Shown piece after piece: positions 1 through 22,813 of a stretch of DNA of 32,000 bases. Both the position numbers and the translations under genes were made by a program. The notes beneath the pieces were generated by a model. The model saw only the letters and a program-made list of their open reading frames with translations. It had not been told where the DNA came from and ran no database searches. Source of the DNA: Wallemia ichthyophaga EXF-994. Taxonomy: Eukaryota > Fungi > Basidiomycota. The stretch spans positions 1 to 32,000 of the forward strand of contig NW_008806292.1 of the NCBI RefSeq assembly GCF_000400465.1. Direction: 5' to 3'. The stretch's first letter is position 1. Each line of letters starts with the position of its first letter.

Positions 1-135
1 ATGGTGTCCTCTGTGCCACACACAGTCATATAGGTAAATCAATAAGTCGGAAACGGCAGCGATAGGATTTAGTCGTAGGGAAAATATTCGGTGAGAATTT
101 TTTTATCACTATTTACTAGTTTTTAAAGCAAGCAG

Positions 136-145
136 TATATATAAA
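136..145 (+). promoter_or_regulatory. TATA element upstream of the tRNA gene
   Basis: TATATATAAA lies 23-32 nt upstream of the mature tRNA 5' end, the usual position for TBP-assisted Pol III promoters. Confidence 0.55.
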
Positions 146-167
146 GACAATCAATTCCGAAATTTAA

Positions 168-249
168 GGAGCAGTAGCTTAGTTGGTTAAAGCGTAAGAT
201 TGCAATATCAGTCATCTTAAGACCACCGGTTCAAATCCGGTTTGCTCCT
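168..249 (+). tRNA. tRNA-Cys(GCA) with an 8-nt intron (206-213)
   Basis: Cloverleaf folded by hand: acceptor GGAGCAG/TTGCTCC, D stem GCTT/AAGC, anticodon stem TAAGA/TCTTA, anticodon GCA at 202-204, T arm ACCGG-TTCAAAT-CCGGT, discriminator T. Extra TATCAGTC sits at the canonical 37/38 site. A T5 terminator follows at 263-267. Confidence 0.92.
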
Positions 250-662
250 TCTATTGTTATAATTTTTCGCAATTTTTTGTTTAAAGCTGATTTCATTGCA
301 ATGAGTGAAATAGTGATCTTGTTCTAATGTTGATTGAACTTTTTTAACTCCGCAAAGCGCCAATTCTCGCCAATTGCGGCTATGTGTGGTTCGCGACGGT
401 TGATACCGGAGTGAAGCAGAATGTATATGAAGTGTCATAATGATCAATCTACAGGTCATTGTGTTCAATTTACCTTGTGCAGCGAGTGCCTTTCAATCTG
501 ACCGTTTCAAATTGCTGCCTCGCAAGCGAGAACAGGCAAAGAGGATGGTGTACGCTAATACATAAATTCAAACCCAATCCTATTGCCACATTTGAAATTC
601 TAAATTTTCTGACTCTTATTGGCGATGATTGCACTCGCTCTTAACTCTCATCATATTCGCCA

Positions 663-2368
663 ATGCTTAGATCAGCCACACGCGTGGGTAACAGCTGGAT
701 TTGCAAGGTGAATCTCACAATCCGGTAGACACAATTTTCTAGGATTCTTCCTCGTGCCACCCCGCAACCTCTCGTCTGGGGCGGCAAGAGCGTTTTGCGC
801 TCATACGCAACAGGCGCTGATCCATACGATGTAGTTATTATCGGTGGTGGTGAGTAAATTGATTATTTTATGTAGACTCATTCGCTCACGCTTTGCGCAG
901 GCCCGGGTGGCTACGTCGCTGCGATCAGAGCAGGCCAAGAGGGTCTCCGTACCGCTTGCATTGAAAGTCGCGGAAGTCTCGGTGGTACTTGTTTAAATGT
1001 TGGATGTATCCCTTCAAAGGCTCTGCTTAACAACTCGCACCACTACGAGGCAGCTCACCACGACATGAAGCACCGTGGTGTTGACATTGGAAACGTATCA
1101 CTCAACCTCGACACAATGATGAAGGCAAAGGTGGGTTATAGCATGATGTAATTGCTTTACTTAACGCCGTCACAGGACACCTCCGTCACTGGCCTCACCA
1201 AGGGTGTCGAAGGTCTTCTCAAGAAGAACAAGGTCGATTACATTAAGGGTACCGGTAGCTTCAACTCTCCAAACAAGATCGATGTTAACCTCCTTGACGG
1301 TGGCGAGACTCAAGTCGAAGCAAAGAACGTCATTATCGCAACTGGTTCAGAAGTTACGCCATTCCCAGGACAAGGTTTGGAGATTGATGAGAAGCAAGTC
1401 ATCTCATCAACCGGTGCATTGGATCTTCCAAAGGTACCAAAGAAGATGGTTGTCATCGGTGGTGGTATCATTGGTTTGGAATTGGGTTCAGTTTGGAGAA
1501 GATTGGGTGCTGAGGTCACTGTTGTCGAATTCATGGGCTCAGTCGGTGCCGGTATGGATGGTGAAATTGCAAAGAACTTCCAAAAGATACTCGCAAAGCA
1601 AGGTGTTGAATTCAAGGTCAATACCAAGGTTGTCTCTGCTGAGAAACACGCCGACGGCGTCAAGTTGAACGTTGAGGGTGTCAAGGATGGCAAGAGTGAG
1701 GCCATCGACGCTGAAGTTGTTCTCTGCTCGATTGGTCGTAGACCAGTCACTCGTAACCTCGGTTTGGACAAGATTGGAATCGAGCTCGACAACAAAGGCA
1801 GAATTCCAGTCGACGGACAATACAACACATCAGTACCAGGTGTCAAGTGTATCGGAGATGTTACATTCGGACCTATGCTTGCTCACAAGGCTGAGGAAGA
1901 GGGAATTGCAGCAGTTGAGATAATCAAGCACGGTCACGGTCACGTCAACTACGATGTCATCCCATCAGTTATTTACACTTACCCAGAAGTCGCCTGGGTT
2001 GGTCGTAACGAAGAGCAATTGAAGGAGGCTGGCGTCAATTACAAGGTTGGAAAGTTCCCATTCTTGGCCAACTCACGTGCCAAGACCAACATGGACACTG
2101 AAGGTACTGTCAAGTTCATCATCGAAGCTGATACCTATGAAATACTTGGTGTGCACATCATTGGACCAAACGCAGGTGAAATGATTGCATCAGCAGCTCT
2201 TGCTATGGAGTACAAGGCATCGGCTGAAGATGTTGCTCGTACTTGTCACGCTCACCCAACACTCTCTGAGGCATTCAAGGAGGCTGCACTTGCGTCATAC
2301 TCTAAACCAATTCAGTGGGTGTCTTTATTTTTGTGGTGGTGTATCACTGACATACTTTTAGCTTCTAA
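663..2368 (+). CDS. LPD1: Mitochondrial dihydrolipoamide dehydrogenase (E3)
   Basis: Spliced model with introns 684-728, 850-900, 1131-1175 and 2315-2361. Presequence-like N-terminus MLRSATRTQFSR; FAD motif [16 protein letters not shown]; redox-active [13 protein letters not shown]; NAD motif [10 protein letters not shown]; C-terminus [10 protein letters not shown]...KPIHF. Confidence 0.97.
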
Positions 2369-2513
2369 ACAAATTGAAAATTCTGTACAAAACGATAATA
2401 TAGATAATACTATGAGTTTGTGAGGGAGAGGTGTGACGTGGGGTGAATAAGTGTGAGCAAGTGTAATAGAGTTGGTTTTCTAATATTACAAGTTGTGATG
2501 CATGTATGCTAGA

Positions 2514-3260
2514 TTACTGGCCTGCCTCGCCGTACTTTTCATGCAATATGCCTGTCCAATAACCAGCAGCATACCATGCTTGAGATAACTGATGTAGTAT
2601 GTAATCCTTTCCAGGATCACCTGTGTTGACGGTATTGTTGACTTGTGAAGGTGCTGCCGTGTTTGTTAAGTTCATCCTGCTTGTTTTGCTTGGTCTCTCT
2701 GCTTCCACACCAATATCTGCGCTTGCTTCTGATTCCTCCATTTCCTCGCTGCTGTCCCTCTTACGCTTGCTTTGCTTGTTTGTTGTTGCGGCAACCTTTT
2801 CGGCAGACTGTTTGGCAGCAATTTTGCCTAAATCGGTACTGCTATCATACCAGATCATTGAGGGCGTCTCCAATTGGTGATTAGGGTCAGTCTTCCACGA
2901 CTGGTCTCCATGAAGCAGTCTGTACTCCTCATTAGCGGCATCCCAAGCTTCGAGGAGCATTGAATCATCCCAGACGCTGAGATCGCCGTCAATGAAAGCA
3001 GCTTCAGCAAACTCCTCGCTGTCCTCCTCGTCATCGTGCCCGTCAGCAGCAACGCCAGCGTCGATCTCGTCGAAGTACTGACTCATTTGATCGATCTTCT
3101 TCTTGTCATTTCGCTGCTTCTTTGACTTTCTCTTTTGCTTATGAGAAGGTTTACTGTCTCTCAATTCAGCCACGAAATTGGGATCAGGAAGCGCAGTTTC
3201 TGGGATTTCTTCCGGCGCAACATCTGAATAGCTAATAGGCTGCCTGCTTGAATCTGACAT
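2514..3260 (-). CDS. SMN1: Survival-motor-neuron (SMN) homologue, fungal Tudor-less type
   Basis: Intronless 248-aa ORF with a Gemin2-binding-like motif (VWDDSMLLEAWDAA) and a C-terminal YG box (AWYAAGYWTG), joined by a low-complexity linker. Confidence 0.8.
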   Translation of the reverse strand: MSDSSRQPISYSDVAPEEIPETALPDPNFVAELRDSKPSHKQKRKSKKQRNDKKKIDQMSQYFDEIDAGVAADGHDDEEDSEEFAEAAFIDGDLSVWDDSMLLEAWDAANEEYRLLHGDQSWKTDPNHQLETPSMIWYDSSTDLGKIAAKQSAEKVAATTNKQSKRKRDSSEEMEESEASADIGVEAERPSKTSRMNLTNTAAPSQVNNTVNTGDPGKDYILHQLSQAWYAAGYWTGILHEKYGEAGQ

Positions 3261-3389
3261 TTTTTATATTCAAGTTGAATTGAGTATGTTTGATGGTTTG
3301 GAGAGTGTCGTTGACCCATTCGATCATAACCTTTTAAATTATAAAGTGAGCTGCTGGAATATCAAGCAAACCAATCTAACGCTATTTAG

Positions 3390-4172
3390 ATGTCAGAACT
3401 TTGTCCAGCTTACGCGCCATTCTTTGGTGCCATGGTGGGTGCCGTCAGCCACGCTCACCTCAACATAGCTCACAATCACTCCAGGGATGCACAGCAGCCA
3501 TCGTATTTACATCACTCGGCGCTGCATACGGTACTGCTAAGTCCGGTGTCGGTATTTCTGCAATGGGTGTTCTCAGACCAGATGTGGGTTGCTGTTGTCC
3601 GTCTTTAGCGCGCTGGTCTGACAAAGCACTCAGCTCATGATGAGAAATGTTATTCCAGTTGTCATGGCTGGTATTATTGCTATTTACGGTTTGGTTGTGT
3701 CTGTTCTGATCAGTGGTGACTGTAGGTGCTCCTACTCCAGCCCAACTGCGTCTTTCCTAACACGCCGTCAATAGTAAAGGCTCCAATGCCTTTATACACT
3801 GGCTTCATTCAGCTGGGCGCGGGTTTGTCCGTCGGTTTGGCTGGTCTGGCCGCCGGTTTTGCTATTGGTATCGTCGGTGACGCTGGTGTCAGAGGTACTG
3901 CCCAGCAGCCTAGATTATTCGTTGGAATGGTGCGTTAGAATGGGTTATTAAGATTATATCTCAAACCTCCTCAAACAGGTTCTTATCCTCATTTTTGCTG
4001 AAGTTTTGGGTCTTTATGGAGTGCGTATAGGCTTTTTTGAAGGTACCCATCTAACCCAGCTACAGCTTATTGTTGCGCTTATCCTTAACACTCGCGCATC
4101 AGACACCCCTGGTGTAGGTTTATGCGAATTTGATAGCTTTTACTGACGTTATCGCAGTGTGACGTGCAATAA
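3390..4172 (+). CDS. VMA3: V-type ATPase 16-kDa proteolipid subunit c
   Basis: Multi-exon: [96 protein letters not shown]. Last exon and stop are less certain. A probable 5'-UTR intron (3346-3389) ends immediately before the ATG. Confidence 0.95.
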
Positions 4173-4376
4173 GCGAAACGCTATATCATCAAAACAGGCT
4201 CCTTCCACACATAACACATCTAAAAAGATTTCCCTTTCTCTTTTCTCCCCTTTGTTATTTACAAAATTTAATGTCCTCTAACATAACCACTTTCTATAAT
4301 AAGATACAAATGCATTAAATAAAAGTGTAAACAAATCCTACCACTTACGCATGCCTCACTTAGGCTTCATCTAAAC

Positions 4377-6901
4377 CTACTCAAGGTCAAACTGCTCAAT
4401 TGCATACGAACCAACACCAAGACTTCTCTTCTCTTCCTTGGCAGCTTTGACCGACATTTGTGGTTCTAATTTGTCCTTTGTAGCCGTAGCTTTGGCTGCG
4501 AACGTCTCGAGCAATCTGCGCAAATCAGCGTGTGCCTGTTCACGCTCGGTGAGTTCCTTGAGTGTGTTGTTTAGCTTCTCGACTTGGTAGTACGACACCT
4601 CGTAGTGCAATAAAATAGGGAAAAAGGCATCGAGCAAAACCTGAGCCATTCTTGTGAGATTTTCTAAAGTCAATTGATACTTCTTTGGTGCTCTGATTCC
4701 CTTCACTCTCTCCCGAATAGCATCCTTTTGTGCTTTGTTAGATATGTTGCTGATATCTGTTTGTGGGTGTGTAAACTCCTTGTGTAGCCAGAATTCCACT
4801 TTTTTAAACAGTCTATTTATATCATCTCCATCTGCAAATTGCTCGTAGAAGCTTCTTCTCATTAAACCAGGCGTGTAATCGGACATTATGACTGCCTTCA
4901 ACACACCGTCAACTTGAGCGAAACCTTCAAATCCTTTTGATTTACTAGATTGGTCAGTCTTACTATCTCCATCTACTTCCATCTTGTCTGTATCTTCCTT
5001 AGTTTTGCGCTGCTCCTCCTGCTGAGTTCTGTGAAGTGCGATTTCTGATTTGAGGATGCTGACGAGTGACGCCTCTGGAATATCACCGACCTGAGTAATG
5101 GCTGGGATGAGGCTTTTTGCGTCTTTGCACTTCCACAGAGCTTGTAGTATACCTCCCCAGTAGATAGCGTAGTCATTCGAGATGACATGCAACCAAATTA
5201 GTCTTGATACTACTGTGCGGCTATAGTGGCTAGGTTGAAACTCAAACACCTTTTCGTGCTTATTCGAGTGGCTAACTTTCTCTTTGAGGGCGTTCTTAAA
5301 GATGAGCTCAATGAGCGACTTGACAAACCATCTTGGTAAGACTGGCTCAGTGGAGATGTTCTTCATCGACTCCTCCTTTATAGTCTTCTGATCTACATCC
5401 TTCCCGAAGCTTTCAAGCGCGGCGTCGGCGAGATCCGCTCTGAAGAGCTCGTTGGCGATGTTCCTCAGTCTCAAGTTCTCTGTTTTAAAGTACTCATTGA
5501 GTACGGCAGTTGCTTCTTCAGAATCAGTTTGTGGATCGGTGATGATCTTCTCGATTAAAGAGAGTGTTTCCTGAAGCTTCGACTGGTCTGGATCGAGCGG
5601 TGATGCTGATTTCTGCTGTACACCTTTGGAGGGTTTGCTGAGGTATTTCTGCGTGACTTGCTCGCGACCAAGAGCTGCGAGGATGGTGGATTGTGAAGGT
5701 ACAGAGAAAGGCACGACCATCACTACCGCTTGCGAGCGTTTCGATGACTTTGATGAGATGGCAAGCATGGCGGATGTTACTGAGATATCAGACAACTCCA
5801 ATTCCACCTCACTGCTACCGACTGATTGGGGGATTGCAAACTCATACTCCGACAACATGATCTTGAGCGTGGTGTCCCATACAGTAAGGACAATCTGATT
5901 CTCCTTTCTAGCCACCAGAAGAGCGAGAGAATTCTTTAGTCCCAACACTGCCAAATCCTTGTACGTGTCCTTGATTGAAATGCTGCTAAGGTGCTTATAA
6001 ATTAATTGATTCTTGTTAATTGATTGTATTTCTATGCTGTTGAATTTGTTGGTTCTGTCTACGATGTGGAGCTGTCCAGTGGATGATGCACTGATCGACC
6101 TTATCGTCTCCTCGAATGGCACAATTGCATTGCCGAGCAACTCGAGTGCTCTTGCAGCATTGTTGAGTACCTGATACGCATTAATCGTGATTGACTTGTC
6201 CTTGTTGCCCTGCGATACTGTCAGCACGACGTATCTTGCAACCTCTGCCTTTGGGAGAAAGGGAACGTTGTCAGCGGCGAAAACGAATTCACCGAGCTGG
6301 CACTGATGGCTGTCGCTCTTCACCTGCTCGATCCTTGTAAAGTCTGAGTGGGTGTAGAGGTATGATCCATCGGGATAGCCGATCAACATGGTTGGCGGGC
6401 TGACAGGGATTGGGTGCAAAGTGGCAGCAGCACCGTCGATCTAGAGTGCTGTCAGTGGAGTCCCCCGCGACACTCCCACGCACCTCAAAGTCTTCCTGCT
6501 GCGACTGGCCACCCAAATGGGCAGCCTGGGAGGCACTCAAAGTCTCTCTCCACGAAAGCACCTTCTGCTTCTTCGTTGAGCCGCCCGAGAGCGCAACAGT
6601 CCTCCTCGTAATATTGCCATCCTTGAGCTCCTCGACGAACGTCGTCGCTGCTGAAGCAAAAGCCGTGGAAGGGCCCGTGGAAAATGATTGAAGGGTGTTC
6701 TGTGATGCTATCTGTAGCCCGTGTCAGCTCGCGTTTATTCATGCCGCGCTCACTCACATCGAGCAAGTGTATTCCATCGGCTTGGACGGTCAGCGTCGCC
6801 AAATCGGTGGCATGCCAAGACGACGACTTTCCCTTTACGTTGAATGGCCTGTTCGCCTGCTTCACCGTGTAATTAGACAGCTGGAATGGCTCATCAATCA
6901 T
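4377..6901 (-). CDS. Probable Utp8/NOL11-like nucleolar protein (beta-rich N-terminus, helical C-terminus)
   Basis: Two GT-AG introns with CTGAC branch sites join the ORFs at 6485-6901 and 6289-6561 in frame to the 680-aa ORF. TVQADGIHLLD...STGPSTAF resembles basidiomycete Utp8-like proteins as I recall them. The gene is well supported; the family call is moderate. Confidence 0.6.
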
Positions 6902-7480
6902 ATTTTAGATGATAGTCGCGGAGAGAGAAGACGGTCCCGGGAGTCGTGATGATCAGCTGCTCGATATACTCCCAGGCAGCGTATTTCTTTTACACTTTAA
7001 TTCATTTGTTTACAGAGTGGCCAACTTATCCAGCTTTCCGAGATTCGAAACAGGAATCGAGACGCTCGACCATGGCTCAAGCGCAGACACTAGCACTGTC
7101 ATACTCGAGCCTGAGAATTACTTCAAGTTTGATTAGAATTACTCAGCTTTATCATTCAGTTCAGCATTGTCAACACGACTAGGATTCGTTAGATAGATGA
7201 TGTTTTCTAGCGAGGTTTGGCAAAGAGCCTTGGACTTTAAGCGGCTTGAACTCGGCTTTTCAGCGCGTTCTACTTGCCGCTTGTCTCAGCGCTGACTCCT
7301 TGCCTTGGCTCATCAGGCTATATCAAATAAAGCAGCTATCAAACAACACAGGCAGAAATCTACGATTTATATACAGCGCATGCTTATTTCCAGCTCGACC
7401 TCCCCAAATCCACTGTTTTACAAATTTGTAGCGATCAGGTCCCCACGAAATGCGTGCCTTCTTCTCCTAAAAAGTCAAAA

Positions 7481-8828
7481 ATGACTACAGCCGGAACACT
7501 CTATAGCCAACCAAATAACTTCAGAGCATTCAGATGCCTCTCTGTCGCTGAATACAACGGCTTGAAGCTTGACACACCAGAGTTCGCGTTAGGCACCTCC
7601 AACAAGACGCCAGAATTCCTTTCCAAGTTCCCATTCGGCAAGGCTCCAGCTTTTGAGTCCGCCGACAAGAAGTTCCACTTGTCCCAAACTGCCGCTATCT
7701 CCTGGTAAGATTGTGTGTTGACATGGAGGAATTACACTCACCGGGACAGGTACCTCGCTTCTCTGAACGACTCAACGGGCCTTCTTGGCAAATCTCCACA
7801 AGATGCTGGTCTCATCCAGCAGTGGATCGCTTTCGGTGATACCGACCTCTTTATCCCTGTCTCACAACCAGCCTACATGGTATTTGGACTGACTCCCGTC
7901 AATCACGCACAGTATCAAGCTGCCTTGCCTCAGATTGAAAGAGCTTTTGCTGTCCTTGAGTCTGTTATCAAGACCCGCACCTTCCTCGTCGGCGAGCGCA
8001 TCACCTTGGCCGATATCTCTGTCGCTTCTATCCTTCGTGTGGCATTCACATACGTCGTCGACAGCGCAATGAGAGCCAAGTTCCCTCACACCGTTAGATT
8101 CTACAAGTCTGTCGCTCACAACCACGTCTGCAGCAAATTCTTTGGCGACATCAACTACCTCGACACTTTCAAACTCACCGCACCAAAGAAGGAGAAGAAG
8201 GAGCAGCCAAAGGAGAAGAAGGAAGAGAAGCCAAAGGAAGAAGCTGCACCAGCCCCAGCTCCAGCTGAGAAGCCAAAGAACCCTCTCGACCTTCTCCCCA
8301 AATCCTCATTCAACCTTGAAGCGTGGAAGCGTGCCTACATGAACCTCGACACGCGTGGCACAGACCCTGCCAAGCACTCGTTGGCTTACTTCTACGCTAA
8401 CTTTGTTCCAGAAGATTACACGGTCGTCAAGTTCACATTCAAGTGGAATGAAGAACTCAAAGCCACCTTTATGAGCAACAACCAAATTGGTGGTTTCTTC
8501 ACGAGACTTGAGGCGTCTCGCAAGTACATGATGGGTGTAGGTCTCGTCCAGAATGACACCAAGGCCGGCGGTGTCGAGGGTGCGTCAGAGATTGACGGTG
8601 TCTTCATCTGCCGTGGTGAAGATTATCTGAGCCTCATTAAGGCTGCTCCTGACTGGGAATCATACGCGTACAGCCCTCTTGACTTGAACAATGTGAGTAT
8701 TTTCCGTCTTCACATGCGTGTCAACTAACATATAAAAGGCGGACGATAAGGCATTCTTCGAGGGTGTCATGGCATGGGATCTCGTCAGCAATGGCAAGGA
8801 GTGTGTAGATGGCAAAATCTTGAAATAA
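7481..8828 (+). CDS. TEF4: Translation elongation factor 1B-gamma (GST-N, GST-C, K/E linker, EF1G domain)
   Basis: Introns 7705-7749 and 8693-8738. NKTPEFLSKFPFGKAPAFE, TFLVGERITLADI, linker KKEKKEQPKEKKEE, EF1G motifs FNLEAWKRAYMN and FMSNNQIGGFFTRLE, C-terminus DGKILK. Confidence 0.96.
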
Positions 8829-9190
8829 ACTGCGAAATGGAAGATTTACACCATGGGTGTGAGACATGTACCGCCTCATACATTTCTACTCTGGCTATTA
8901 AAAATCTACGTTGTATTGGTGTTGGAGGGAAATAACACGCGCTAGGAAGAATATCTAGCTTGTGTAGTGCTGACCTGGCTAGATCGTGCACCACCTGTGT
9001 CTTGTGCGTTGTTTCGTATTGCGTTGTTTCGTATGAATATCTCATGTGTTTTACTACATGAAATGGAGAATGATGATGGGGATGCACACGTCTTCTCCTA
9101 ATCCTATCGCTGTCACTCCTTCATCGCATCTCTTTCCATGCACGACTCGCTGCACTGTTCGAGCCGCGAGAGGTGGAAGGCTCACAGATG
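8601..9190 (+). repeat. Left arm of a 590-bp inverted repeat (EF1B-gamma 3' CDS, last intron, last exon and downstream DNA)
   Basis: Compared line by line with the reverse complement of 15031-15620: collinear, no indels, mismatches only at 8668, 9166, 9175 and 9181. Confidence 0.98.
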
Positions 9191-9529
9191 AAAATATGTA
9201 AAGACGCTGCTTCTGGAGACTCTTTGAAAACAAAGCTTCGTCCGATGTTATACAGTCGCCTTAGGCTCGGTAAACTTAGTTCAACTTGTCTGAATGAGTT
9301 TCAGATCCGTGAAAAAAGTGGATGGTGCGAGCGCAGAAATTTTCAAAGCACCTCAAGACCCCGGGTATACCGATAGAAGAGATCGGTCAGGAACTGCTTC
9401 TCATAATGTGAATTGAAGATTTTTACTCAAAACCCCTTATTCAATCAAATTGTAGTTAGTCGCAGGGCTTCAATATTATTGTACCTAATGCAATGATGGT
9501 CTTTCACATTTCATAAATAAATGAAAATT

Positions 9530-9574
9530 GACAAGACGCTCAACGTATCCCAAGCTGCCGCTATTTCCTGGTAA
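9530..9574 (+). pseudogene. Relic of a third EF1B-gamma/GST copy
   Basis: 38/45 nt identical to 7664-7708. Encodes DKTLNVSQAAAISW followed by the same GTAA intron donor. No intact flanking frame. Confidence 0.75.
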
Positions 9575-10288
9575 AAGTGTTACATTCTCTGGTTATCAAG
9601 ACTCTTTCTTTGTGGATTGAAGCAAGAGGAAAATAAATACATATGATCAGCTGGTACAAGTTGTTTTGTGGTACAAGAGATCTCGTAAACATCAATTGAA
9701 ATAAGCTCTTTTCCATACAACCAAACAGGCAATTTTTAAAACTATAAGTGCGATGTTGATACGCGCATTAAAGTCCTGATCTAATATGCAAAAACTTTAC
9801 GGGATTCAAGTTTTTGGACGTTTTCCTACAATTCTCAAAACACGCAGGGATCTTGCAGCGCTTTAGTGAGCAAGTTTGGTTGGTTTTGTTCCACCCTCAA
9901 CTTGCGCCTCGTTAGTGATTCTGGTTCCATTGGCTTCCACGCCGTAGTATAATGGAAGCAATTCATTGTGACAATCACTACGCATCTTACTTGTTCGTAA
10001 CTCATAGACAATCAGAACCTCGTATCCTTAGCGAAGCATCTCTTATTTGATAAACATACCCTTTGTGATATGTTAGTAAGATAAAATCAGAACTAAATAA
10101 AACCTGTGAATAGTTTATCGCAACTAAGGGCATTTTATTGCCTTATGGCGAGTCCGTTTCTCTATTTGTTCCAGTGTCTTATCTGAGAAAAAGCAACACA
10201 CACTTGATTATCTTTCCGAGGTTGTGCTTGTTATCCAAGTCGTTGTAATGGAGCTTGAACTGGCAAAAATAACATTTTACTCTTTTCG

Positions 10289-10417
10289 AGGAAAACGTCA
10301 GCCAAGGTAGACGGCGGTAAAGTCACAGCTGAGGATATTGAAGCGCAAAGACTGGTCAAAGTCGACGAGGATGATCCGCTTCATCATGTCATCGCGAATG
10401 ACGTGCCGCCGTTTTAA
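10289..10417 (+). pseudogene. Isolated fragment resembling the Slu7 C-terminus
   Basis: Translates to RKTSAKVDGGKVTAEDIEAQRLVKVDEDDPLHHV..., an ungapped match to the Slu7 terminal motif T-EEEMEAYR-x6-DDPM as I recall it. No ATG and no upstream Slu7 exons seen. Confidence 0.4.
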
Positions 10418-10601
10418 GATAGATATTATTTATTATCCAAAGTTGCAAGAGTTATACAAACGTTGATAGTGATATTGAATCTAAACTTCTTTTCAGAAAT
10501 TCTCGAAACGGGTTGTACTGTCTCATTCGACATAGGGCTGAGGTCAATTTTACTGGGTTATTTATGAGGCCCTATTTACTGAATAAGCTTTATCCTGGAA
10601 G

Positions 10602-11328
10602 CTATATAAGATCGGATACGGGACCAAATTTGTTCATTCTCGAGAGGTAACCCAAACGCTTTAAATTAAAATTAAAATTAGATTTAGATTTAAAATCAGC
10701 AGCGTATAAAAACAAACCATCTTCTTTTGTTTCTGCTTCAATTGTTTTAATTCTGGGTTTTGAGTCCAAAAGGATGTTTGTTTGTCGCATTTGTCGCATT
10801 TGGAAATCGTTCAATAATGTAAATGCTCAGGTGGCTGAATGACGTGAAATGAGTGCTATTTGTCCCAGAATTTTTGACTTTGATATGCACAGGCAGAAAT
10901 TTCATGTGGGTTTTATTAGGAATTGGGACTATCAATGTCTTAAGTTTTGGTGATTTGGAAGACAGAAAGGCAATCCTGCGAAAATGCAAGAGCCTTTCAT
11001 TTATGAGCTTCCTGTTAGGTATACTGAAGTCTGAATTCGAAGTCTGAATGAAAGGCGTCAGAGAAGCATTTCCAGCAAAAGTAAAACTCGCTGTAATGTC
11101 GTTAGCTTTCGATTCGTCACTGATTTAAAGCTCCAACTAGTTTCAAAAGCATTCAATTGAGGTTTATTGTATCTCTTGCCAAATATCATTGAACTCGGCC
11201 TAGGTCCAGATATCTTGGTGAGCCGATAAGCGGACCCCAAAAGATAGAGTTTACGAGAGCAAGCGATAAGATAACGCGTATTTGATGATATTATCAAATA
11301 ATTCGACAGGTATAAGTAGAAATGACAT
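10602..11328 (-). pseudogene. Frameshifted F-box/LRR-like gene relic
   Basis: ATG at 11328 gives MSFLLIPVELFDNIIKY (F-box start). The F-box second half (LIACSRKLYL) is in another frame. Downstream LRR-like pieces (FLSSKSPKLKTLIV, ILLDSKPRIKTIE) are split by stops and small tandem duplications. Confidence 0.5.
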
Positions 11329-12560
11329 TCTTCTTTTACTGAGTTGCATTAGGATAGGTGGGCAAAGAATCAAAGAAGCAAGATTTGGTGATTTTACGAA
11401 AGTAGCAATCCAGTTTTTGAATTACTTACTCGTCTGGTATTTATACCTTCCTCCAATCGATGAGCCCTCACGCTATGTTTGTAGGCAGTCACCACCTCTA
11501 TACCACCAAAGACAAATACAACATAAGGTGAATGGCCAATGATGGTCAGAGGCTATCCAATTTTACTCAACTGATGATTCGTGTTTTCGGATTTCCTTCT
11601 CAAGTCTCTTATGTGTCTCAGAGAAACTGAGACAAGCTTGGAGCGTAGTATAGACCAGTCCCAGTTTAGCGTTCATGGGGTGCAACGGGAGAACATAGTC
11701 TGTTAGCATATTCCATATCTCATTATTATTTTTTACTTCATATATGAATTAATTTCCTCTATTTAGCCATAAAACAGTAATTTTATCACTGAACGGAAGC
11801 AACAGCGATGACAAAGAATGGTTGAATGAATCAATGAAATTATAAGCACAAGAAGCTTGAAATGCCCCGGAATATAGACAATCGAATTATCAACATGCGC
11901 GACTAATATGTGCAAGATCCGTGACCAACACAATATTTGGTAAAGCAGGTGTTCTGCAGCACTGTCGAGAGCGTTGCGCTTCTATAAAGCTTTAATATAC
12001 GGCAACATGTAATCAAGTCTTTATAACATTGTATCAACCCTCCCAAGTGATCAATTTGATCCCAGTCGGCTCTCTGAGGAGATTCTCAAGGTTGTTCTGT
12101 AAATGATGCAACTAAGTCAAATGCCACATGACAGTGCTTAAATACGCCCAGGATCAAATGGGTAACGGATGATAGTGATGTGATAGTGCCTTAAATTTAT
12201 GAGAAAAAAACTTGGAAACCTGTGAGACAACAAAATTACTGACGATCCGAGGATTACTTGAGGCTTCTCTCACTATTTTCCGGCAGTAATTGTAATTATC
12301 GATCTGGATTCTGTCTGAACGTGCATCAATGATGTCACCAGAGTCGTATTATCAGGGTGAATGCGTGGTGAATGGAGAGAGGCATGCAATAATTTTATAA
12401 GAGTCTATCCTTTAGAACAATCAATTTGCTTGGATAGTAATTTTCTCCTATTCTCGTGTGATCAATGGACTATCTGATGAAAGTGAGTGTAGAAAGACTG
12501 CAACGGCTTGAAGAGAGTTCAAGGCGGTTTAAATGTGATAAAGTAACCAAAAATGCCTAA

Positions 12561-12827
12561 TTAGGTATACTGAAAGCCGAAATTCTCTATGATTCATCAT
12601 TCAATCTCTTTATAGCATTACAGTTGATCATCGAAGAGCAATTACAGCTCGGAGACGGTCAATCGCTGGCAAAATTCAACATTCATTGTAATTTAAAGCT
12701 AAATAAACGCACAAAGTGCTCTTTTACAATTGAATCATCCCCTAATAATCACCAAATCACAAAGAAAAGTACGTTATCACAAATCGAGAATGACAAGCTT
12801 AATGTCGTGTTCGTCATAGCTCTGTGA
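12561..12827 (+). pseudogene. Possible degenerate ubiquitin-like domain fragment
   Basis: LKAEI-x13-LIIEEQLQLGDGQSLAKFNI parallels ubiquitin VKAKI-x12-LIFAGKQLEDGRTLSDYNI. No ATG; the similarity is weak. Confidence 0.25.
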
Positions 12828-15030
12828 TTACAGCAAACGTGAGAAATATTGTTATCGTTTTTTAGCGATTGATTTTGTAATATATAATGGAGTGGGTTTA
12901 ACGTGAATAGCGTTGTACGGCGCTCAGTAATTATTCAATCAGATGTGAAATGGCTCTCATAGTTTATTTTTTTGGAGTCGAAATATTTATTCCATTTTCC
13001 TTCCTGCCTTCTACGACGCCAATGCAACCTTAATCGTTTTCAAACCCCCATTGTTCGAGATTTCGAAATCCACTGTGAGGCCAAATCCCCGATTTCAAAG
13101 TTAGGTTGACCCCCATTTTTGTTTGCATGAATCGCATTCAATTAATTTGGAATGATCCGTCACAACAATTATATTTCCTTGGTTCCCCGTTTGAGTCCTA
13201 TGGACCCTACGTGCCGGAAAATGTAAATCGTGTTTATAGAGACGAATACTTGGCATCTTTGGGTGATTGCACTCTAAATCAGCTATGAAAGCTTGGTTAT
13301 ATCAATGAGACGCATGAAGTTCCCCGTATTATCGTATAGCGTGCTCCAGTGGATGTCGGACTGCAACTTCTGAACGGCGTACAGAGCAAAATTGTTGCCT
13401 TAGGGATATAACTCTGGATGAATTGATAGAACTCGTTCAAGATTATCTATCAAGCTTTTGCCTTCGGAGATCGTCAAAATTTGTAAAGCAACCATCCGAA
13501 TGATGGGTGGTAGTGGAGAAATCAAACTCAATGGATATTTTAACCTGAGCGTATGCTCGATATGAGAATAGCTAAGAAAATCCGAGAATACCATAAATCG
13601 ATGCTTTTGCTAAATTGTTCATTTTGTCCATATGTAGTATCGCTGCGTTCGTCTTCTCAATTACTTACTTGGTCGTTGCAGGGCTATGTGAGCAGATCTA
13701 ATTAATTAAAGTAATCCATACTGCTGCAGGCATCTTTTCTAATAAAATAGCTTGATAATTTATACTGAATTATGTATGGGCAGCTCTAATGCCAAAAAAT
13801 AAAAGAGAAATTGCTATAGACTTTATACGTATTGATGATCACAACAGCTGCCCGTGAATATTAAAATGCGTATGTCCACTCAAATTGTTTGCTACATGTT
13901 GTTGTTGACTAATCGAGACAATGAGATTGTTGTGAGACATCGACCTGGACGCTCCCCTCAATTCTTTCCTCTCCTTTAGTAATAAAAAGCACAGAACATC
14001 AAGCGAATAGGTATAAGAAGTCTTCTTGGTTTGCAGATGAGGCGAACTAGAACCAGATATACTCAAATGACAAGGCAAGGCTGTTTCAAGCAGATTACCG
14101 CCTGGTCGACAATAAGTCTTTTGGATACAATATGTATCAATCTAATTAAGAATTCAATCTTGCCTTGGGGTTGGAGTATTTTGGGTTCTTGTTAGCCTGC
14201 TTTGAAAACTAGGCAGATTTCTTATAATGCTTGTGCTTTTCGTCAATGTTAAGTTTCAAATAGAAACCCGGTCTAAATGGAGATTTTAGGTCGATTTATG
14301 AAATGCATGTGATGGTTATCCACCAAATCCCTGTCTTTAAGGTGTAAGAGTCGAGAGTGAAACTTTTAGTAAAGAAAGTAGGTTATCGTGTAATAAGATA
14401 TTCCTATATTCATCTTATGTTTCTAGTTAAAGGCTATATGTTGATTTCCAGATATTCTGGTAGAAACAATGTCCTTTATTCATGGTCTCGTAACGTGTGT
14501 AACATTGATTTTAAGAAAGCACTGATACGACTCGATTTTGGTAAACACAAAATGTAAGGCTAGTGCCATTATGAATGATCGTAGTTTTGACATACATGAA
14601 ATAAGTCTCGACTGCTGGGTAGATTTAGTCGAACATTCTGTCCATTTTATAACATAACATCGCTTAGTCAAATATCATCAATAAAGCTGCACTAGAAAGT
14701 GATCAATGGATGAGATTGTAAAATTTACTGGTCTAAAGGCTGCCTCTTACAAGTTAACTAGGACAGCTTTACCTAGGCAGTTTATTCTCGTTCTAAAGAA
14801 AGAACTCTTCTTGCCGAAGAAAGTCCAGCCTAGTTATTTGATGCATCTCCAGTAAGTCGCAACGGAGCTCGGTGGTCTAATTTTATGGGCGCACCTGAGC
14901 CCCGATACCTACCTCTAGTGGAAATGTTTGAAAAGATTGTCTCAAATGGAGCAGGGCTTTAACGCAAGAGGTGTCGATTATTCCGATTATAGGTTCTCCA
15001 GCGTTGCTTCGATTTGCTTTCATCTGCTCC

Positions 15031-15620
15031 CATCTGTGAACCTTCTACCTCTCGTGGCTCGAACAGTGCAGCGAGTCGTGCATGGAAAGAGATGCGATGA
15101 AGGAGTGACAGCGATAGGATTAGGAGAAGACGTGTGCATCCCCATCATCATTCTCCATTTCATGTAGTAAAACACATGAGATATTCATACGAAACAACGC
15201 AATACGAAACAACGCACAAGACACAGGTGGTGCACGATCTAGCCAGGTCAGCACTACACAAGCTAGATATTCTTCCTAGCGCGTGTTATTTCCCTCCAAC
15301 ACCAATACAACGTAGATTTTTAATAGCCAGAGTAGAAATGTATGAGGCGGTACATGTCTCACACCCATGGTGTAAATCTTCCATTTCGCAGTTTATTTCA
15401 AGATTTTGCCATCTACACACTCCTTGCCATTGCTGACGAGATCCCATGCCATGACACCCTCGAAGAATGCCTTATCGTCCGCCTTTTATATGTTAGTTGA
15501 CACGCATGTGAAGACGGAAAATACTCACATTGTTCAAGTCAAGAGGGCTGTATGCGTATGATTCCCAGTCAGGAGCAGCCTTAATGAGGCTCAGATAATC
15601 TTCACCACGGCAGATGAAGA
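15031..15620 (-). repeat. Right arm of the 590-bp inverted repeat
   Basis: Reverse complement of 8601-9190 (position sum 24221 throughout), 586/590 identical. Confidence 0.98.
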
Positions 15621-16278
15621 GGCTGAATTTGTAGCTTTCGAGGTATTGGATATCGCCAAAGATAGGGCTAATGACGTGGTTGTGGGCGATAGACTTGTAG
15701 TGTCTAAGGGTGTGTGGGTACTTGGCCCTCATAGATGCGTCAATGACGTGCAAGTATGCGAAGCGGAGGATGGAGGCAACGGTGATGTCAGCGAGGGTGA
15801 TACGCTCACCGACGAGGAAAGTGCGAGACTTGAGGACGGATTCGAGGGCGTTGAGAGCTCTCTCCAAAGCAGGGAATGCAGCGTCACTGGCTGGCTTGAT
15901 TGGCTGCATGAAGCCGAGGTTCATGTAGGCTGGCTGAGAGACAGGGAAGAAGATGTCAGTCTCAGCGAACATGACCCATTGCTGGATGAGAGCTGCATCG
16001 GCTGGAGACTTGCCGAGAAGACCAGTTGAGTCGTTGAGAGAGGCAAGGTACCAGGAAATGGCGGCAGTTTGAGAAAGCTTAAGGGACTTATCGGCTGACT
16101 CAAATGTCGGAACCTTTCCTGAAGGGAACTTTGCCAAGTACTCAGGAGTCTTGTTGGTGCTGCCAAATTCAAAGGCAGGGGTGTCCACCTTCAAATCGTT
16201 GTAGGCTGCCACTGCAAGGCATCTGATAGCTCTGTAGCTGCCTGGGTAGGTGTAAATTGAACCGACTGATGAAGACAT
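15393..16278 (-). CDS. Chimeric EF1B-gamma-class GST protein (divergent GST domains plus a copied EF1B-gamma C-terminal tail), ~279 aa
   Basis: Exon 1 16278-15529, intron 15528-15483, exon 2 15482-15393. The GST part is ~64% identical to the first gene by manual count (140/218) and lacks its intron 1. It joins in frame at YKFS|LFICRGEDY to the duplicated tail. The linker and most of the EF1G domain are absent. Confidence 0.85.
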
Positions 16279-18992: not shown

Positions 18993-20165
18993 ATGTCATC
19001 ATCGCCTGAACCCGAATTAATCTACGATAGTGGTAGTGATGGTTATAATCAGCTTGATAACGATAACGATAACGATAACGATAACGAGCATTTTAATCCG
19101 GGCTCCGGAGGTTTATTGCCTGGGGATGTGGATTTACAGAAAGATACACACGACAACGCAGACGTCAACGAGGAAAATGAAAATTATAACACCCATATTC
19201 AAGACACAGACATTCCACTCCCCACACTCCCCTCCCTCAAGAGAAAAGCTATGGACGAAGCCAGCGATAGCCCTTCAAAGCTCACGAAAGCAAAAGCACA
19301 TACCAATGCGCTTGACTCAGCTCAACGCCCTCGACAGTCAAAACCAGCTGAAGAAGAATCACCCTTCTGGCCCAAAGCTGAGAGCAGAAACAGCCAAACT
19401 AAATTCAAGAGACAGAGTTTAGTTGGTGTAAGTGGTGATGGAGGTGATGGTAGAATCGATGCTGATGGCGATACCACCGGTGGCAATTCAAGACTTAAGC
19501 AGCTTTTCGCTATCGGCGATGCTCCACGCTCCCCTCGAACGGAGGTACTAAACAAACGGTTTCAGCATCAGAACCAGGACCAGCATAAAAATCACGATCA
19601 AGATCACGACAAGGAAAACCCATTCTATGATGCATTTGTAGACGTACACGAGCATCCTCATCACAACTACGGTGAAGATTTTCATTCTGATAGTACAACT
19701 GATCCACGTCCTGTCATTGTCAAGCACGAATCAGACGTTGGTGCTGTGCGAGGCTGGTCACCTGGTGAAGATGAGAATGAGAATGAGAATGAGAGCGAGA
19801 GCGATAGTGATCATCACAGCGAGGATGATAGCCAACGCATCAATAATTACATGCGTAGAAACAAGCAACGTGAGGATGATGATAATCTCAATGGCTTCAC
19901 AATATACACTCAAGACGATGCTCAAATCACCCGCAATTCACAGCACTCGCTCAACGCAGCCCAGAAATTGAAACAGACGATTGAAAATGTCCACATCGTC
20001 TCTCTCGATGCTCTGATGGAGGCTAGCAGCGAGTCAGCGCAATTCCTAGACTCGTCTGCAGCACCACTCAAACGTCTATCTAATATAATGGCTGAACATT
20101 CACGCTGGATTGAAACATTCGTGAGAGTGGTAGACCAGAAGAAGCACAACGAAGCTATATTGTAG
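18993..20165 (+). CDS. Hypothetical acidic, low-complexity protein with a helical C-terminus
   Basis: Intronless 390-aa ORF, D/N/E/H-rich, with no recognised domain. Confidence 0.7.
   Translation: MSSSPEPELIYDSGSDGYNQLDNDNDNDNDNEHFNPGSGGLLPGDVDLQKDTHDNADVNEENENYNTHIQDTDIPLPTLPSLKRKAMDEASDSPSKLTKAKAHTNALDSAQRPRQSKPAEEESPFWPKAESRNSQTKFKRQSLVGVSGDGGDGRIDADGDTTGGNSRLKQLFAIGDAPRSPRTEVLNKRFQHQNQDQHKNHDQDHDKENPFYDAFVDVHEHPHHNYGEDFHSDSTTDPRPVIVKHESDVGAVRGWSPGEDENENENESESDSDHHSEDDSQRINNYMRRNKQREDDDNLNGFTIYTQDDAQITRNSQHSLNAAQKLKQTIENVHIVSLDALMEASSESAQFLDSSAAPLKRLSNIMAEHSRWIETFVRVVDQKKHNEAIL
19056..19085 (+). repeat. (GATAAC)5 coding microsatellite
   Basis: Five perfect copies encoding DNDNDNDNDN. A (GAGAAT)3(GAGAGC)2 array occurs at 19773-19802 in the same gene. 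Confidence 0.95.
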
Positions 20166-20212
20166 ATTATTATGTTGTATTATTTATTTTTCATTTCCCT
20201 AGTGTTGTTACC

Positions 20213-22669
20213 ATGCCCATCGCTTTATCTCCATCTTCCATCATGTCACACCGACCCAGCGCCGACAACGGCCCATTGCTCCCGCAACACAACCGCGATG
20301 ACGACGATGGCGATAAGGATGTGATATTCGACGAAGCGGCGCCTTTGAACGGGAGTCCTGGCGGCACGCACAACCGGACCCGCAGGCAGAAATGGCAGTC
20401 TCCTCGATCCAAGAATATAATGGTAATCTCAGGCTGTCTGTTTATAATCCCGATATTGTGTCTGCTAAGTCCGCTCTTGGCGCTCGACACACTCGTACCA
20501 CATCCCCCGCAAGAAGCACACGCACCCAAACACCACTTCTCCCTGACTGATGCCAAGTCTGACGCCGGCTCACATACGCAGGACCACCGCCCGTGGCCCA
20601 CGGACGACGGTTTCCCATCTGAGCCATTCAGGACCGATCTCGGTGACGTTGGCGGTACTCAGACTGGCGCAGAAGCTTTCATCGTACAGACTGCAGCTGC
20701 TTATCCACTCGAATCTGCCCTTAATCCCGCTATCGTTAAGCCTACTGCTAAGGATGCTCGCGGACCTGATGATTTTGACGTTTTGAGGTGGGAAATGGGT
20801 TTTATTGGGGGAATCCTACTGACGCTGTCATTCCACATTCAAAACTATCAGACACCTAGGCCCCCTCACGCCTTACACCTCTTCGCCTAATTACCTCCCA
20901 ACCACTCCACTCGCGCCTGACACCTGTCAGGTCGAGGAGGTGCATATGCTACACAGACACGGTGTGTGAGGGTGTTTGATATGTGATGGACGTTGACTCT
21001 TTTACAGGATCGAGGTACCCCACGCCGAACTCAATGCCGCTTAGATTTTCCGATAAATTGTCCGCGGCTGTGAAAGAAGCGTATGATTCAGACTATAACA
21101 TTGGCTTCCACGGCGAGCTAGCATTTCTCAACGAGTGGAAGTATGCACTTGGAGAAGCCATTCTCACTCCAGTGGGTAGATGGCAGCTCTACAATTCCGG
21201 TGTAGGTGAAGGGTCACGAATGGAATTTTATGTGTCTCACACCGCTCACAGGCTGGTTTCCGACTAAAATACGGCCATCTCCTCACCAAACTTACAGAAC
21301 ACAAGCCAGTATTCCGTACAACGACGCAGTGAGTGGGTGCTTTATTTTACTTTATCACTCACACCCACTCCCACTTTAGAGACCGCATGTATAAATCAGC
21401 GTGGGTGTCTTGTCAGCGTGCGACTAAGCCCCCATTCACACTCTCACAGCATCAACTGGCTCGCAGGTTTCTTCGGCGTCGAGAGCTGGCAGGAAGAGTC
21501 GCACCTAAGCATCATGCATGAAGCAAGTGGATACAATAACACCCTCGCCCCGTGGGAGATTTGCCCGCGCGAGGATTCATACCAAAGCAAAGCGCATGTC
21601 GGCAAATGGAGGAATAAGTACCTCCGCAATGCGCTAAAACGCCTCAACAAATTAGCTTTTGGGTATGAGTTTGAAATTGGCGATGTTTTTGCAATGCAGG
21701 TGAGTGTACTTTCATCTTTTCAAATTGCAACTGACGTCATCTTTGTTTTTGATATCGATAGGAATTGTGTGCTTGTGGGTGGTTGATTAGAGTTTAGTGT
21801 TGCGCTTGCTCATTACTTACTCATCCCCCAGACGAGACAGTATCACTCGGATACAGTGAATTTTGCCACCTATTCACTAAGCAGGAATGGGAGGGTGAGT
21901 GGTCTTTCTGCTTTTATCTAGTACACGCCCTGACATTTTCACCAGGCTATGACTACTCATGGGATCTGCAATTCTACTATGACGCCGGCTTCGGTAGCCC
22001 CACAGCGCGCGCACAGGGGCTGGGATGGGTTGAAGAGACTCTCGCGCGCATCACCAAGCAGACGCCTGCGCCATATGACTCGACTACCAACTCCACACTC
22101 AATGAGGACCCCGTCACATTCCCCCTCGATATGCCAATGTACACGGATTTCACACACGATACCGTCATAGCAAATGTCGTTGCCGCGCTCAACCTCACCC
22201 AATTCGCAGCTCCTCTGCCATCTAATCGCATTCCGCGCCCTTCGCGTCATAGCAGTCGTTGGCGTACTTCACATATTTCGCCTTTCGCGGGTAATCTCGT
22301 CGTGCAGGTCCTGAGTTGTGACGGGGGCGAGGGTATTAGTGATGTGAGTGAAAAAGAGGACGCTTGGGAAATCACAAAAACACATAAGGTGCCACGTGCA
22401 GGTGAGTGTAGTTGTAGCATTGACCGAGGAACACTAACACTGATACCCGCTCTTTAGGCAGATACATCCGTCTTGCGCTCAACGACGCCGTACACGACTT
22501 GTCGGGTTTGGGCTGTCCATTCGATGACGAGGGCTTGTGTCCGTTGGACACTTTCACAGATGCACTCAACAGGGTGAGAGAAGAGGTGGATTTCGAGGGA
22601 GATTGCCACGGAAAGTGGGATATGGGGGCAAACGATCATGTCTCCAGCGGTCGCCCGCCTGTGCAATAG
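20213..22669 (+). CDS. Histidine acid phosphatase/phytase 1 (clade 2), probable type II membrane anchor
   Basis: Nine introns modelled. RHG|SRYP spans intron 2; DFTHDT acid motif; hydrophobic segment near aa 68-90; micro-exons at 21380-21400 and 21762-21774. Confidence 0.9.
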
Positions 22670-22813
22670 CGTTGGTAAATTAGTGCGTTAGACAAAGTAC
22701 CATGGTTGCCACGCCCATGCTTACGAGATTTTTTGTATTTTTCAAACGTAAAAATCATAGTGATGATCATTGTTCGGAATATCCGCCATCAACTATACAC
22801 TCGACATCGTGCA

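What the first reader, a model, noticed from the sequence alone, without database searches (positions are those of the whole stretch)
8601..16278. A 590-bp inverted duplication grafts the EF1B-gamma tail onto an old GST paralog, creating a chimeric gene
Seen: two convergent genes share the same 3' end (last ~30 codons of the penultimate exon, the intron, the last exon and ~360 bp downstream; 586/590 nt identical), while their GST domains are only ~64% identical in protein. The junction (AGCC|TCTTCATC vs GGTG|TCTTCATC) falls at the end of GST-C and is in frame. The second protein is therefore GST-N/GST-C plus ~60 EF1G residues, without the linker or most of the EF1G domain. Established: stand-alone EF1B-gamma-type GST proteins exist in fungi. 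Inference: a very recent template switch or gene conversion gave an old paralog a new tail, intron and terminator. The arms could also let the 5.8-kb core invert without changing either protein.
Basis: partly seen in the sequence, partly recalled or inferred. Interest (0 to 1): 0.8.

Follow-up and report, generated by a model that had tools for sequence, protein, structure and literature searches.

The report
Truncated copy of duplicated eEF1B-gamma gene
The "chimeric" gene is one of two convergent full-length elongation-factor-1-gamma paralogs of the halophilic fungus Wallemia ichthyophaga that lacks 432 internal bases only in the 2013 reference assembly, so it is a deletion or an assembly error and not a newly grafted gene.

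Summary
Arms 8601-9190 and 15031-15620 are a 590-nt inverted repeat (586/590) at the 3' ends of two convergent genes whose GST domains are only 63-66% identical.

The window is Wallemia ichthyophaga EXF-994 scaffold KE007242.1:1-32000. Both genes are already annotated: EOQ99301 (418 aa) and EOQ99302 (279 aa).

The "graft" reading fails.
- In six other strain assemblies checked at DNA level (15-16 by accession), copy B leaves the reference exactly at 15621. It continues into the lysine-rich linker and EF1G domain, so B is a full-length eEF1B-gamma paralog there.
- B sits at the ancestral syntenic position. W. hederae and another Wallemia species have one full-length gene at that place.
- In the other strains the arms are about 1.0 kb, and the repeat boundary differs between strains. 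That indicates ongoing gene conversion of the 3' halves.

The reference B therefore equals full-length B minus 432 in-frame bases. The left breakpoint is exactly where B-specific sequence merges into A/B-shared sequence, and the reference was built with SOAPdenovo at K=21. I favour a mis-assembly (about 0.6) over a real deletion private to this strain (about 0.3). No reads were available to decide between them. Interest is low to moderate.

The parts
7481..8828 (+). Gene A, full-length eEF1B-gamma (EOQ99301 / XP_009269760, 418 aa). Exons 7481-7704, 7750-8692 and 8739-8828. It is the lineage-specific extra copy.
   Evidence: Spliced translation is identical to P0134. Pfam finds GST_N, GST_C and EF1G (E=1e-33). 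No counterpart at this position in W. hederae or in L012.
8181..8600 (+). Linker plus most of the EF1G domain of A (420 nt). The matching 432-nt segment of B, which carries a B-specific 12-nt insertion, is present in other strains but absent from B in this assembly.
   Evidence: Alignment of L001, L006-L010 and L002 with A and B. In L002, 432 nt lie between ...TTCAGCC and TCTTCATC....
8601..9190 (+). Left arm of the inverted repeat as assembled: the last 31 codons of A's exon 2, intron 2, the last exon, and 362 nt downstream of the stop codon.
9191..15030 (.). 5.84-kb core. It is 38% GC, has no stop-free frame longer than 125 aa, and has no Pfam or Rfam hit and no RIP signature. It is absent from the syntenic interval of two other Wallemia species.
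15031..15620 (-). Right arm of the inverted repeat as assembled. It differs from the left arm by 4 transitions.
15620..15621 (-). Junction. 15621 is the last B-specific base. Every other strain contig continues here with CACCAAAGAAGGAG..., whereas the reference continues with TCTTCATC... There is no microhomology and no N.
15393..16278 (-). Gene B as assembled (EOQ99302 / XP_009269761 / UniProt R9AB18, 279 aa). Exons 16278-15529 and 15482-15393. It is the copy at the ancestral syntenic position and is full length in other strains.
   Evidence: Synteny with W. hederae and L012.

Best explanation
W. ichthyophaga carries two convergent full-length eEF1B-gamma paralogs. B is at the ancestral locus. 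A is a lineage-specific inverted copy 5.8 kb downstream.

Their GST-coding 5' halves have diverged under purifying selection. Gene conversion between the inverted copies keeps the 3' ~1.0 kb (linker, EF1G domain, intron 2, 3' UTR and about 360 bp beyond the stop) almost identical.

The 590-bp arm and the 279-aa "chimera" in this window are that same structure with 432 in-frame bases missing from copy B. I think the loss is most likely not in the genome. The 2013 reference was built from short reads with SOAPdenovo 1.04 at K=21, so the second copy of a ~1-kb perfect repeat had to be rebuilt by scaffolding and gap filling. The B-specific contig appears to have been butt-joined to an incompletely filled arm.

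Shown: B is full length in other strains and in outgroups; the arms are ~1 kb elsewhere; conversion-tract boundaries vary between strains; the loss is seen only in the reference; the breakpoint lies at the edge between unique and repeated sequence.

Inferred: the loss is an assembly error and not a real allele.
For: 1. Identity of the window. It is GCA_000400465.1 KE007242.1:1-32000 (L005 is 100% identical).

2. B is full length in other strains.
- Proteins P0001 and P0124 continue into the linker and EF1G, and P0124 carries a PF00647 hit.
- 15-16 strain accessions fall in that protein cluster.
- Six contigs align to the window from about 26278 down to exactly 15621 and then continue into the linker.
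- Two of these contigs (L001, L006) stop exactly 119 nt after the last A/B difference, which is k-1 for the k=120 assembler (method in PMC6738226). L007 and L008 stop 98 nt after it. These stops imply a perfect ~1.0-kb repeat.

3. Full length is ancestral at B's position. W. hederae (L004) and Wallemia sp. (L012) each have one full-length gene there with collinear flanks and no A copy or core. By my four-point reading of the identities, A and B are sister paralogs.

4. Concerted evolution of the 3' halves. GST-region dS is about 1.1 against 4/590 differences in the arms. The boundary shifts between strains: E3P86 B becomes A-type from about 7978, and the gene at the A locus in L002 becomes B-type from 8129.

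5. Points favouring an artefact.
- The reference used SOAPdenovo 1.04, K=21, with 500-bp and 2-kb libraries (PMC3849046).
- No other strain has the 279-aa form.
- The left breakpoint falls on the exact base where B-specific sequence merges with A/B-shared sequence. A de Bruijn contig must end there. A random deletion would hit that base about once in a thousand.
Against: - There is no N run at the join, and I cannot reproduce the exact assembler step that would give a blunt join without Ns.
- The join is in frame, which has a 1 in 3 chance under an artefact.
- The B arm carries its own SNP (15553) only 68 nt from the junction, so B-specific reads were used close to it.
- EXF-994 differs from every other strain by 0.4-0.6% in this flank, so private variants are expected.
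- No reads of EXF-994 were available to me.
Confidence: 0.6

Rival explanations
1. The 432-bp loss is real. It is a blunt, in-frame deletion private to the EXF-994 lineage. It turns the redundant paralog B into a GST-only protein with a non-folding 61-residue remnant of the C-terminal domain, which would be an early step of pseudogenisation or of becoming a stand-alone EF1B-gamma-class GST.
For: - The sequence is contiguous and free of Ns, and the junction is in frame.
- The B arm has its own SNPs, one of them 68 nt from the junction.
- EXF-994 is a distinct lineage here, with 40-56 mismatches per 10.6 kb to the six B-side contigs that continue into the linker (123 to E3P86).
- Paralog redundancy would tolerate the loss.
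Against: - The loss is found in none of the other strain assemblies.
- The left breakpoint coincides to the base with the edge between unique and repeated sequence. That is unexpected for a random deletion.
- The assembly method (K=21) is error-prone in exactly this kind of repeat.
Confidence: 0.32
2. One reading: an old stand-alone GST paralog recently acquired the last ~590 bp of A (tail, intron and terminator) by template switch or gene conversion.
For: In the reference assembly alone the structure looks like this.
Against: - B carries the linker and EF1G domain in all other strains checked.
- The outgroups have a full-length gene at B's position.
- The B-specific 12-nt insertion in the linker shows that B's linker is its own and not a fresh copy of A's.
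Confidence: 0.03
3. The identical 3' halves come from one recent segmental duplication or a single conversion event, and not from recurrent gene conversion.
For: The identity step at the linker is sharp, and there are few differences within the arms.
Against: Different strains have different boundaries: 8181 with the 12-nt indel in most strains, about 7978 in E3P86, and a B-type tract from 8129 at the A locus in L002. Some strains also have arm SNPs private to one copy, such as E3P84 at 8275 and 8290. These require several independent events.
Confidence: 0.1

Closest known systems
Duplicated eEF1B-gamma genes in fungi (for example S. cerevisiae CAM1/TEF3 and TEF4; from my own knowledge)
   Same: Two paralogs, each with GST-N, GST-C, a lysine-rich linker and the EF1G C-terminal domain. 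Both are under purifying selection.
   Different: Here the copies are convergent neighbours 5.8 kb apart, and only their 3' halves are kept identical.
Arm-to-arm gene conversion in inverted repeats or palindromes (for example human Y-chromosome palindromes and chloroplast inverted repeats; from my own knowledge)
   Same: Within one genome the arms are nearly identical, while the flanking paralogous sequence is old. The identity boundaries are sharp, and the arrangement could allow the spacer to invert.
   Different: The arms are small (~1 kb) and begin inside a coding region at a domain boundary. One protein domain therefore evolves in concert while the other diverges.
Stand-alone EF1B-gamma-class GSTs of fungi (GTE/EFB-gamma class; from my own knowledge)
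   Same: The reference model of B has only the GST-N and GST-C domains of the EF1B-gamma type.
   Different: B is not an independent GST lineage. It has the full C-terminal half in other strains and in the outgroups.
Collapsed or mis-filled repeat copies in short-read de Bruijn assemblies
   Same: The anomaly is seen in one K=21 assembly only, lies inside a repeat longer than the reads, and has a breakpoint at the edge between unique and repeated sequence.
   Different: No Ns or other visible scar, and the join happens to be in frame.

Membership tests
eEF1B-gamma (EF1G family) | GST_N and GST_C domains of the EF1B-gamma type | tested here: met
   Both A and B hit PF02798 and PF00043. The best homologs are fungal elongation factor 1-gamma proteins.
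eEF1B-gamma (EF1G family) | Complete C-terminal EF1G domain (PF00647 / PDB 1PBU fold) | tested here: not met
   This verdict is for B as assembled in the window. B has no PF00647 hit and keeps only about the last 62 of 162 domain residues. The feature is met by A (E=1e-33) and by B of other strains as far as their contigs reach (P0124 carries PF00647).
Stand-alone EF1B-gamma-class GST | An independent gene lineage that lacks the linker and EF1G domain across strains and relatives | tested here: not met
   B has the linker and EF1G in six strain contigs and 15-16 accessions. The syntenic genes of W. hederae and L012 are full length.
Concerted evolution by gene conversion between inverted repeats | Paralog identity in the tract far above the divergence of adjacent paralogous sequence | tested here: met
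   4/590 differences in the arms against about 30% nucleotide divergence and dS about 1.1 in the GST region.
Concerted evolution by gene conversion between inverted repeats | Tract boundaries differ between individuals, indicating recurrent events | tested here: met
   E3P86 B is A-type from about 7978, and L002 is B-type from 8129. Most strains have the boundary at 8181 with a 12-nt indel.
Assembly artefact (mis-filled repeat copy) | Absent from independent assemblies, with a breakpoint at the edge between unique and repeated sequence | tested here: met
   Assembler settings.
Assembly artefact (mis-filled repeat copy) | No reads of the same strain support the junction | not testable with these tools
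   The paper mentions neither SRA nor GEO and reports only the GenBank WGS deposit. No independent contig encodes the exact 279-aa protein.
Inverted-repeat centromere (Komagataella phaffii / Candida tropicalis type) | AT-rich, gene-free core flanked by inverted repeats | tested here: met
   The core is 38% GC and free of ORFs, and lies between the arms.
Inverted-repeat centromere (Komagataella phaffii / Candida tropicalis type) | CENP-A occupancy, one such region per chromosome, and conserved position in relatives | tested here: inconclusive
   Occupancy and number per chromosome cannot be tested here. The core is absent from the syntenic interval in two related species, which counts against this reading.

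The most novel reading that the evidence does not exclude
The 5.8-kb AT-rich, ORF-free, lineage-specific core lies between ~1-kb inverted repeats formed by the homogenised 3' halves of two convergent genes. It could be a flip-flop invertible segment, and possibly a small inverted-repeat centromere of the kind known from Komagataella phaffii. Contig L002 would then be the opposite orientation isomer.
Probability: 0.07. Interest if true: 0.6.

Novelty: new member of a known kind. Interest (0 to 1): 0.25.

Why it matters
Annotation. The 279-aa "Elongation factor 1-gamma" (EOQ99302 / XP_009269761 / UniProt R9AB18) is in RefSeq and UniProt and was used as evidence to annotate 21 further genomes. 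It is probably a truncated model of a ~431-aa protein.

Biology. The locus is a compact natural example of domain-specific concerted evolution. One half of a duplicated gene is free to diverge (GST domain, about 35% amino-acid divergence). The other half (linker and EF1G domain) is kept identical by conversion between inverted copies, with tract ends that differ between strains of a species described as having little recombination.

If the deletion is real, it would show one way in which a stand-alone EF1B-gamma-type GST can arise from an elongation-factor gene.

Tried and rejected
- Look-up of the spliced B protein. I reached the protein through the homology search and the cluster listing instead.
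- Bubble-contig idea. I considered that the right breakpoint, 67 nt from SNP 8668, marked a k=67 bubble contig. I dropped this when the paper gave K=21.
- Metagenome scan. A scan for the B-specific 20-mer next to the junction returned one unrelated contig, a chance match. No further scan was allowed.
- Strains closest to the reference. I looked for strains 7 and 8 of PMC6738226. None of the fetched B-side contigs is closer than 0.37%. Three of the 21 strains are not represented among the B proteins.
- Nature of the core:
  - no Pfam hit in the six longest of its stop-free frames;
  - no Rfam family or tRNA;
  - no RIP signature, with TpA/ApT 0.77 and (CpA+TpG)/(ApC+GpT) 1.29;
  - only three small tandem repeats;
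  - no nucleotide similarity to the syntenic intergenic DNA of W. hederae or L012.
- Intron positions as an orthology marker. They were uninformative. A has introns after ISW and after DLNN. B lacks the first. W. hederae has a single intron at a third site, YMMG|TG.
- E3P96 contigs (L013, L014). They were too fragmented to place a conversion boundary.
- Literature. Neither the 2013 genome paper nor the 2019 population paper mentions the elongation-factor genes. Neither Wallemia genome paper appears among the 8 listed of 14 papers that hold 'Wallemia' and 'centromere', and I opened none of them.
Full report
**1. Observation**

The repeat is real. Arms 8601-9190 and 15031-15620 are 590 nt, reverse-complementary and 5840 nt apart. 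They differ at four positions, all transitions: 8668, 9166, 9175 and 9181. Outside the arms the two genes remain alignable but diverged, at 72-81% nucleotide identity.

Spliced by hand, gene A (+; exons 7481-7704, 7750-8692, 8739-8828) encodes 418 aa. Gene B (-; exons 16278-15529, 15482-15393) encodes 279 aa. The B junction is ...YKFS|LFICRG..., in frame. Pfam finds GST_N, GST_C and EF1G in A, but only the two GST domains in B. The 61-residue tail of B matches roughly the last 62 of 162 residues of the single globular C-terminal domain solved as PDB 1PBU. It is therefore a fragment of a domain and not a folding unit.

**2. Source of the window**

The homology search identified Wallemia ichthyophaga. 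The window is the first 32 kb of scaffold KE007242.1 of the EXF-994 reference, GCA_000400465.1 (100% identity). Both genes are already annotated as "Elongation factor 1-gamma": EOQ99301 (418 aa, P0134) and EOQ99302 (279 aa, P0126, identical to my model of B). The reference was assembled from Illumina reads of 500-bp and 2-kb libraries with SOAPdenovo 1.04 at K=21 (PMC3849046).

**3. Copy B in other strains**

A population study assembled 21 more strains at more than 200x coverage with IDBA-Hybrid, k up to 120, guided by the reference (PMC6738226). In those assemblies B is annotated as a partial protein of 258-299 aa. After ...YLESYKFS it continues PPKKEKKEEKKEQPKEKKEEKPKEEAAPAPAPAEKPKNPLDLLPKSSFNLEAWKRAYMNLDTRGTDPAKHSLAYFYANFV (P0001, P0124). 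The cluster holds 15-16 accessions, and the longest member carries a PF00647 hit.

At DNA level, six B-side contigs (L001, L006-L010) align to the window from about 26278 down to exactly 15621. They then continue with CACCAAAGAAGGAGAAGAAGG[AGGAGAAGAAGG]AGCAGCC.... This is A's linker sequence plus a B-specific 12-nt insertion (EEKK).

Two of these contigs (L001, L006) stop exactly 119 nt (k-1) after the last position at which that strain's A and B differ; L007 and L008 stop 98 nt after it. In strain E3P84 the A and B partial proteins end at the same residue (P0130, P0124). This is the signature of a perfect repeat longer than k. In these strains the arms therefore begin at the linker (A coordinate 8181) and are about 1.0 kb long. 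Logan contig L002 contains one complete arm of 1007 nt, with exactly 432 nt between ...TTCAGCC and TCTTCATC....

**4. The ancestral state**

W. hederae (L004) and a further Wallemia species (L012, 70-80% nucleotide identity) have collinear flanks on both sides: the histidine-phosphatase genes, ORC2 and a ~310-aa gene on one side, and the ~811/835-aa gene, ATP-synthase subunit c, a ~265-aa gene and a pyridine-nucleotide oxidoreductase on the other. In both, a single full-length eEF1B-gamma gene sits at B's position, with 1.9-2.5 kb of ordinary intergenic DNA after it. Neither has an A copy or an AT-rich core.

Pairwise GST-domain identities are A-B 66%, A-hederae 65%, B-hederae 63%, A-L012 72%, B-L012 69% and hederae-L012 74%. 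By the four-point condition applied to these values, A groups with B. A is therefore a lineage-specific inverted duplicate of B. Since the duplication both GST domains have diverged strongly but under constraint (dN 0.25, dS 1.11).

**5. Why the 3' halves are identical**

Divergence drops from about 30% to about 0% at the start of the linker. It stays there through the EF1G domain, intron 2, the 3' UTR and about 360 bp beyond the stop codon. The boundary differs between strains:
- In E3P86 (L003), B switches to A-type sequence at about 7978, and the contig ends 117-119 nt later.
- In L002, the gene at the A locus switches to B-type sequence at 8129 and carries the B-type 12-nt insertion. Only 12 nt are shared at the switch point, too few for a k=31 assembler to jump across.
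- In E3P84, B has two private SNPs, at 8275 and 8290.

Several independent exchanges are needed to explain this. It is recurrent gene conversion between inverted copies, that is, concerted evolution restricted to the C-terminal half of the protein.

**6. What the "chimera" is**

Reference B equals full-length B minus 432 bases (144 codons). B has its own linker, marked by the 12-nt insertion. It is full length in every other strain checked. It descends from a full-length gene.

What remains open is whether the 432-bp loss is in the EXF-994 genome or only in its assembly.

For an artefact:
- The loss is seen in no other assembly, and no other annotated protein resembles the 279-aa form.
- The second copy of a ~1-kb perfect repeat cannot be resolved by a K=21 graph, so it had to be rebuilt by scaffolding and gap filling.
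- The left breakpoint lies on the exact base where B-specific sequence merges into A/B-shared sequence (15621). A de Bruijn contig ends there. A random deletion would start at that base about once in a thousand.

For a real deletion:
- There are no Ns.
- The join is blunt and in frame.
- A B-specific SNP lies 68 nt from the junction.
- EXF-994 is a distinct lineage, 0.4-0.6% from the six contigs that reach the junction in this flank (1.2% from E3P86).

There is no microhomology at the junction, which fits neither overlap-based gap closure nor slippage particularly well. From memory of SOAPdenovo's scaffold output, the first K bases of each downstream contig are trimmed by default. That would place the join exactly at 15621. 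I could not verify this and treat it as inference only.

I put a mis-assembly at about 0.6, a real private deletion at about 0.3, and everything else at about 0.1. That the structure arose by loss and not by a graft I hold at more than 0.9.

**7. The core and inversion**

The 5.84-kb spacer is uniformly 34-41% GC. The window as a whole is about 47% GC and the genome about 45% (PMC3849046). The spacer has no stop-free frame longer than 125 aa, although about 72-74% of the genome is coding. It has no Pfam, Rfam or tRNA hit, no RIP signature and no similarity to the outgroup intergenic DNA.

L002 (SRR25393946; 98.4% identical to the window over the A-side alignment, 4294-9190) runs from the A flank through a complete arm into the B-side end of the core (window 15030 down to 14403). 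This fits an inverted core in that strain, or a crossover near 8128. It is a single short-read contig that somehow crossed a 1-kb repeat, so I treat it only as suggestive. An inverted-repeat centromere is the most novel reading that the evidence leaves open. The absence of the core from the syntenic site in two relatives counts against it.

**8. Verdict**

What is present is an ordinary kind of structure, an inverted paralog pair with gene conversion, plus a truncation of one copy specific to the reference that is probably an assembly error. Novelty: a new member of a known kind. Interest: low to moderate. The practical consequence is that the RefSeq/UniProt entry for B should be re-examined.

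Noticed in passing
window 9191-15030: A 5.84-kb stretch at 38% GC with no open frame longer than 125 aa. It has no Pfam or Rfam hit and no RIP signature, in a genome that is about 73% coding. It is absent from the syntenic interval of W. hederae and of another Wallemia species.
   Followed up: partly
L002 (Logan SRR25393946_6033) 1-5523 vs window 4294-9190 and 15620-14403: The contig joins the A flank through a full 1007-nt arm to the B-side end of the core. The gene at the A locus is B-type from 8129, including the 12-nt insertion. This could be an inversion isomer, a crossover product or an assembly chimera.
   Followed up: partly
L003 (strain E3P86, SPOI01000235.1) 10001-10572: Copy B switches from B-type to A-type sequence at about window coordinate 7978, inside GST-C. 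In this strain the repeat is about 1.2 kb and the converted tract reaches into the GST domain.
   Followed up: yes
window 9005-9034 (and the mirror site in the right arm): A perfect 15-nt tandem duplication (TGCGTTGTTTCGTAT x2) downstream of the stop codon, present in both arms. L002 has a single copy.
   Followed up: no
window about 20200-26400: Three tandem paralogs of a histidine-phosphatase (His_Phos_2) gene. The reference annotation splits them into 390-646-aa models, whereas the 2019 re-annotations give 1033-1051 aa.
   Followed up: no
window 167-251 (+): A tRNA gene (Rfam 62.5 bits). ARAGORN could not assign an anticodon to it, and I take it to contain an intron. W. hederae L004 has a 90%-identical segment (19905-19978) matching window 168-249.
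   Followed up: no
L004 10001-11339 vs window genes A and B: Intron positions differ between close relatives. A has introns after ...AAISW and after ...DLNN. B lacks the first. W. hederae has one intron at a third site (YMMG|TG). The gene calls in two other Wallemia contigs suggest that an intron at the first site is ancestral.
   Followed up: partly
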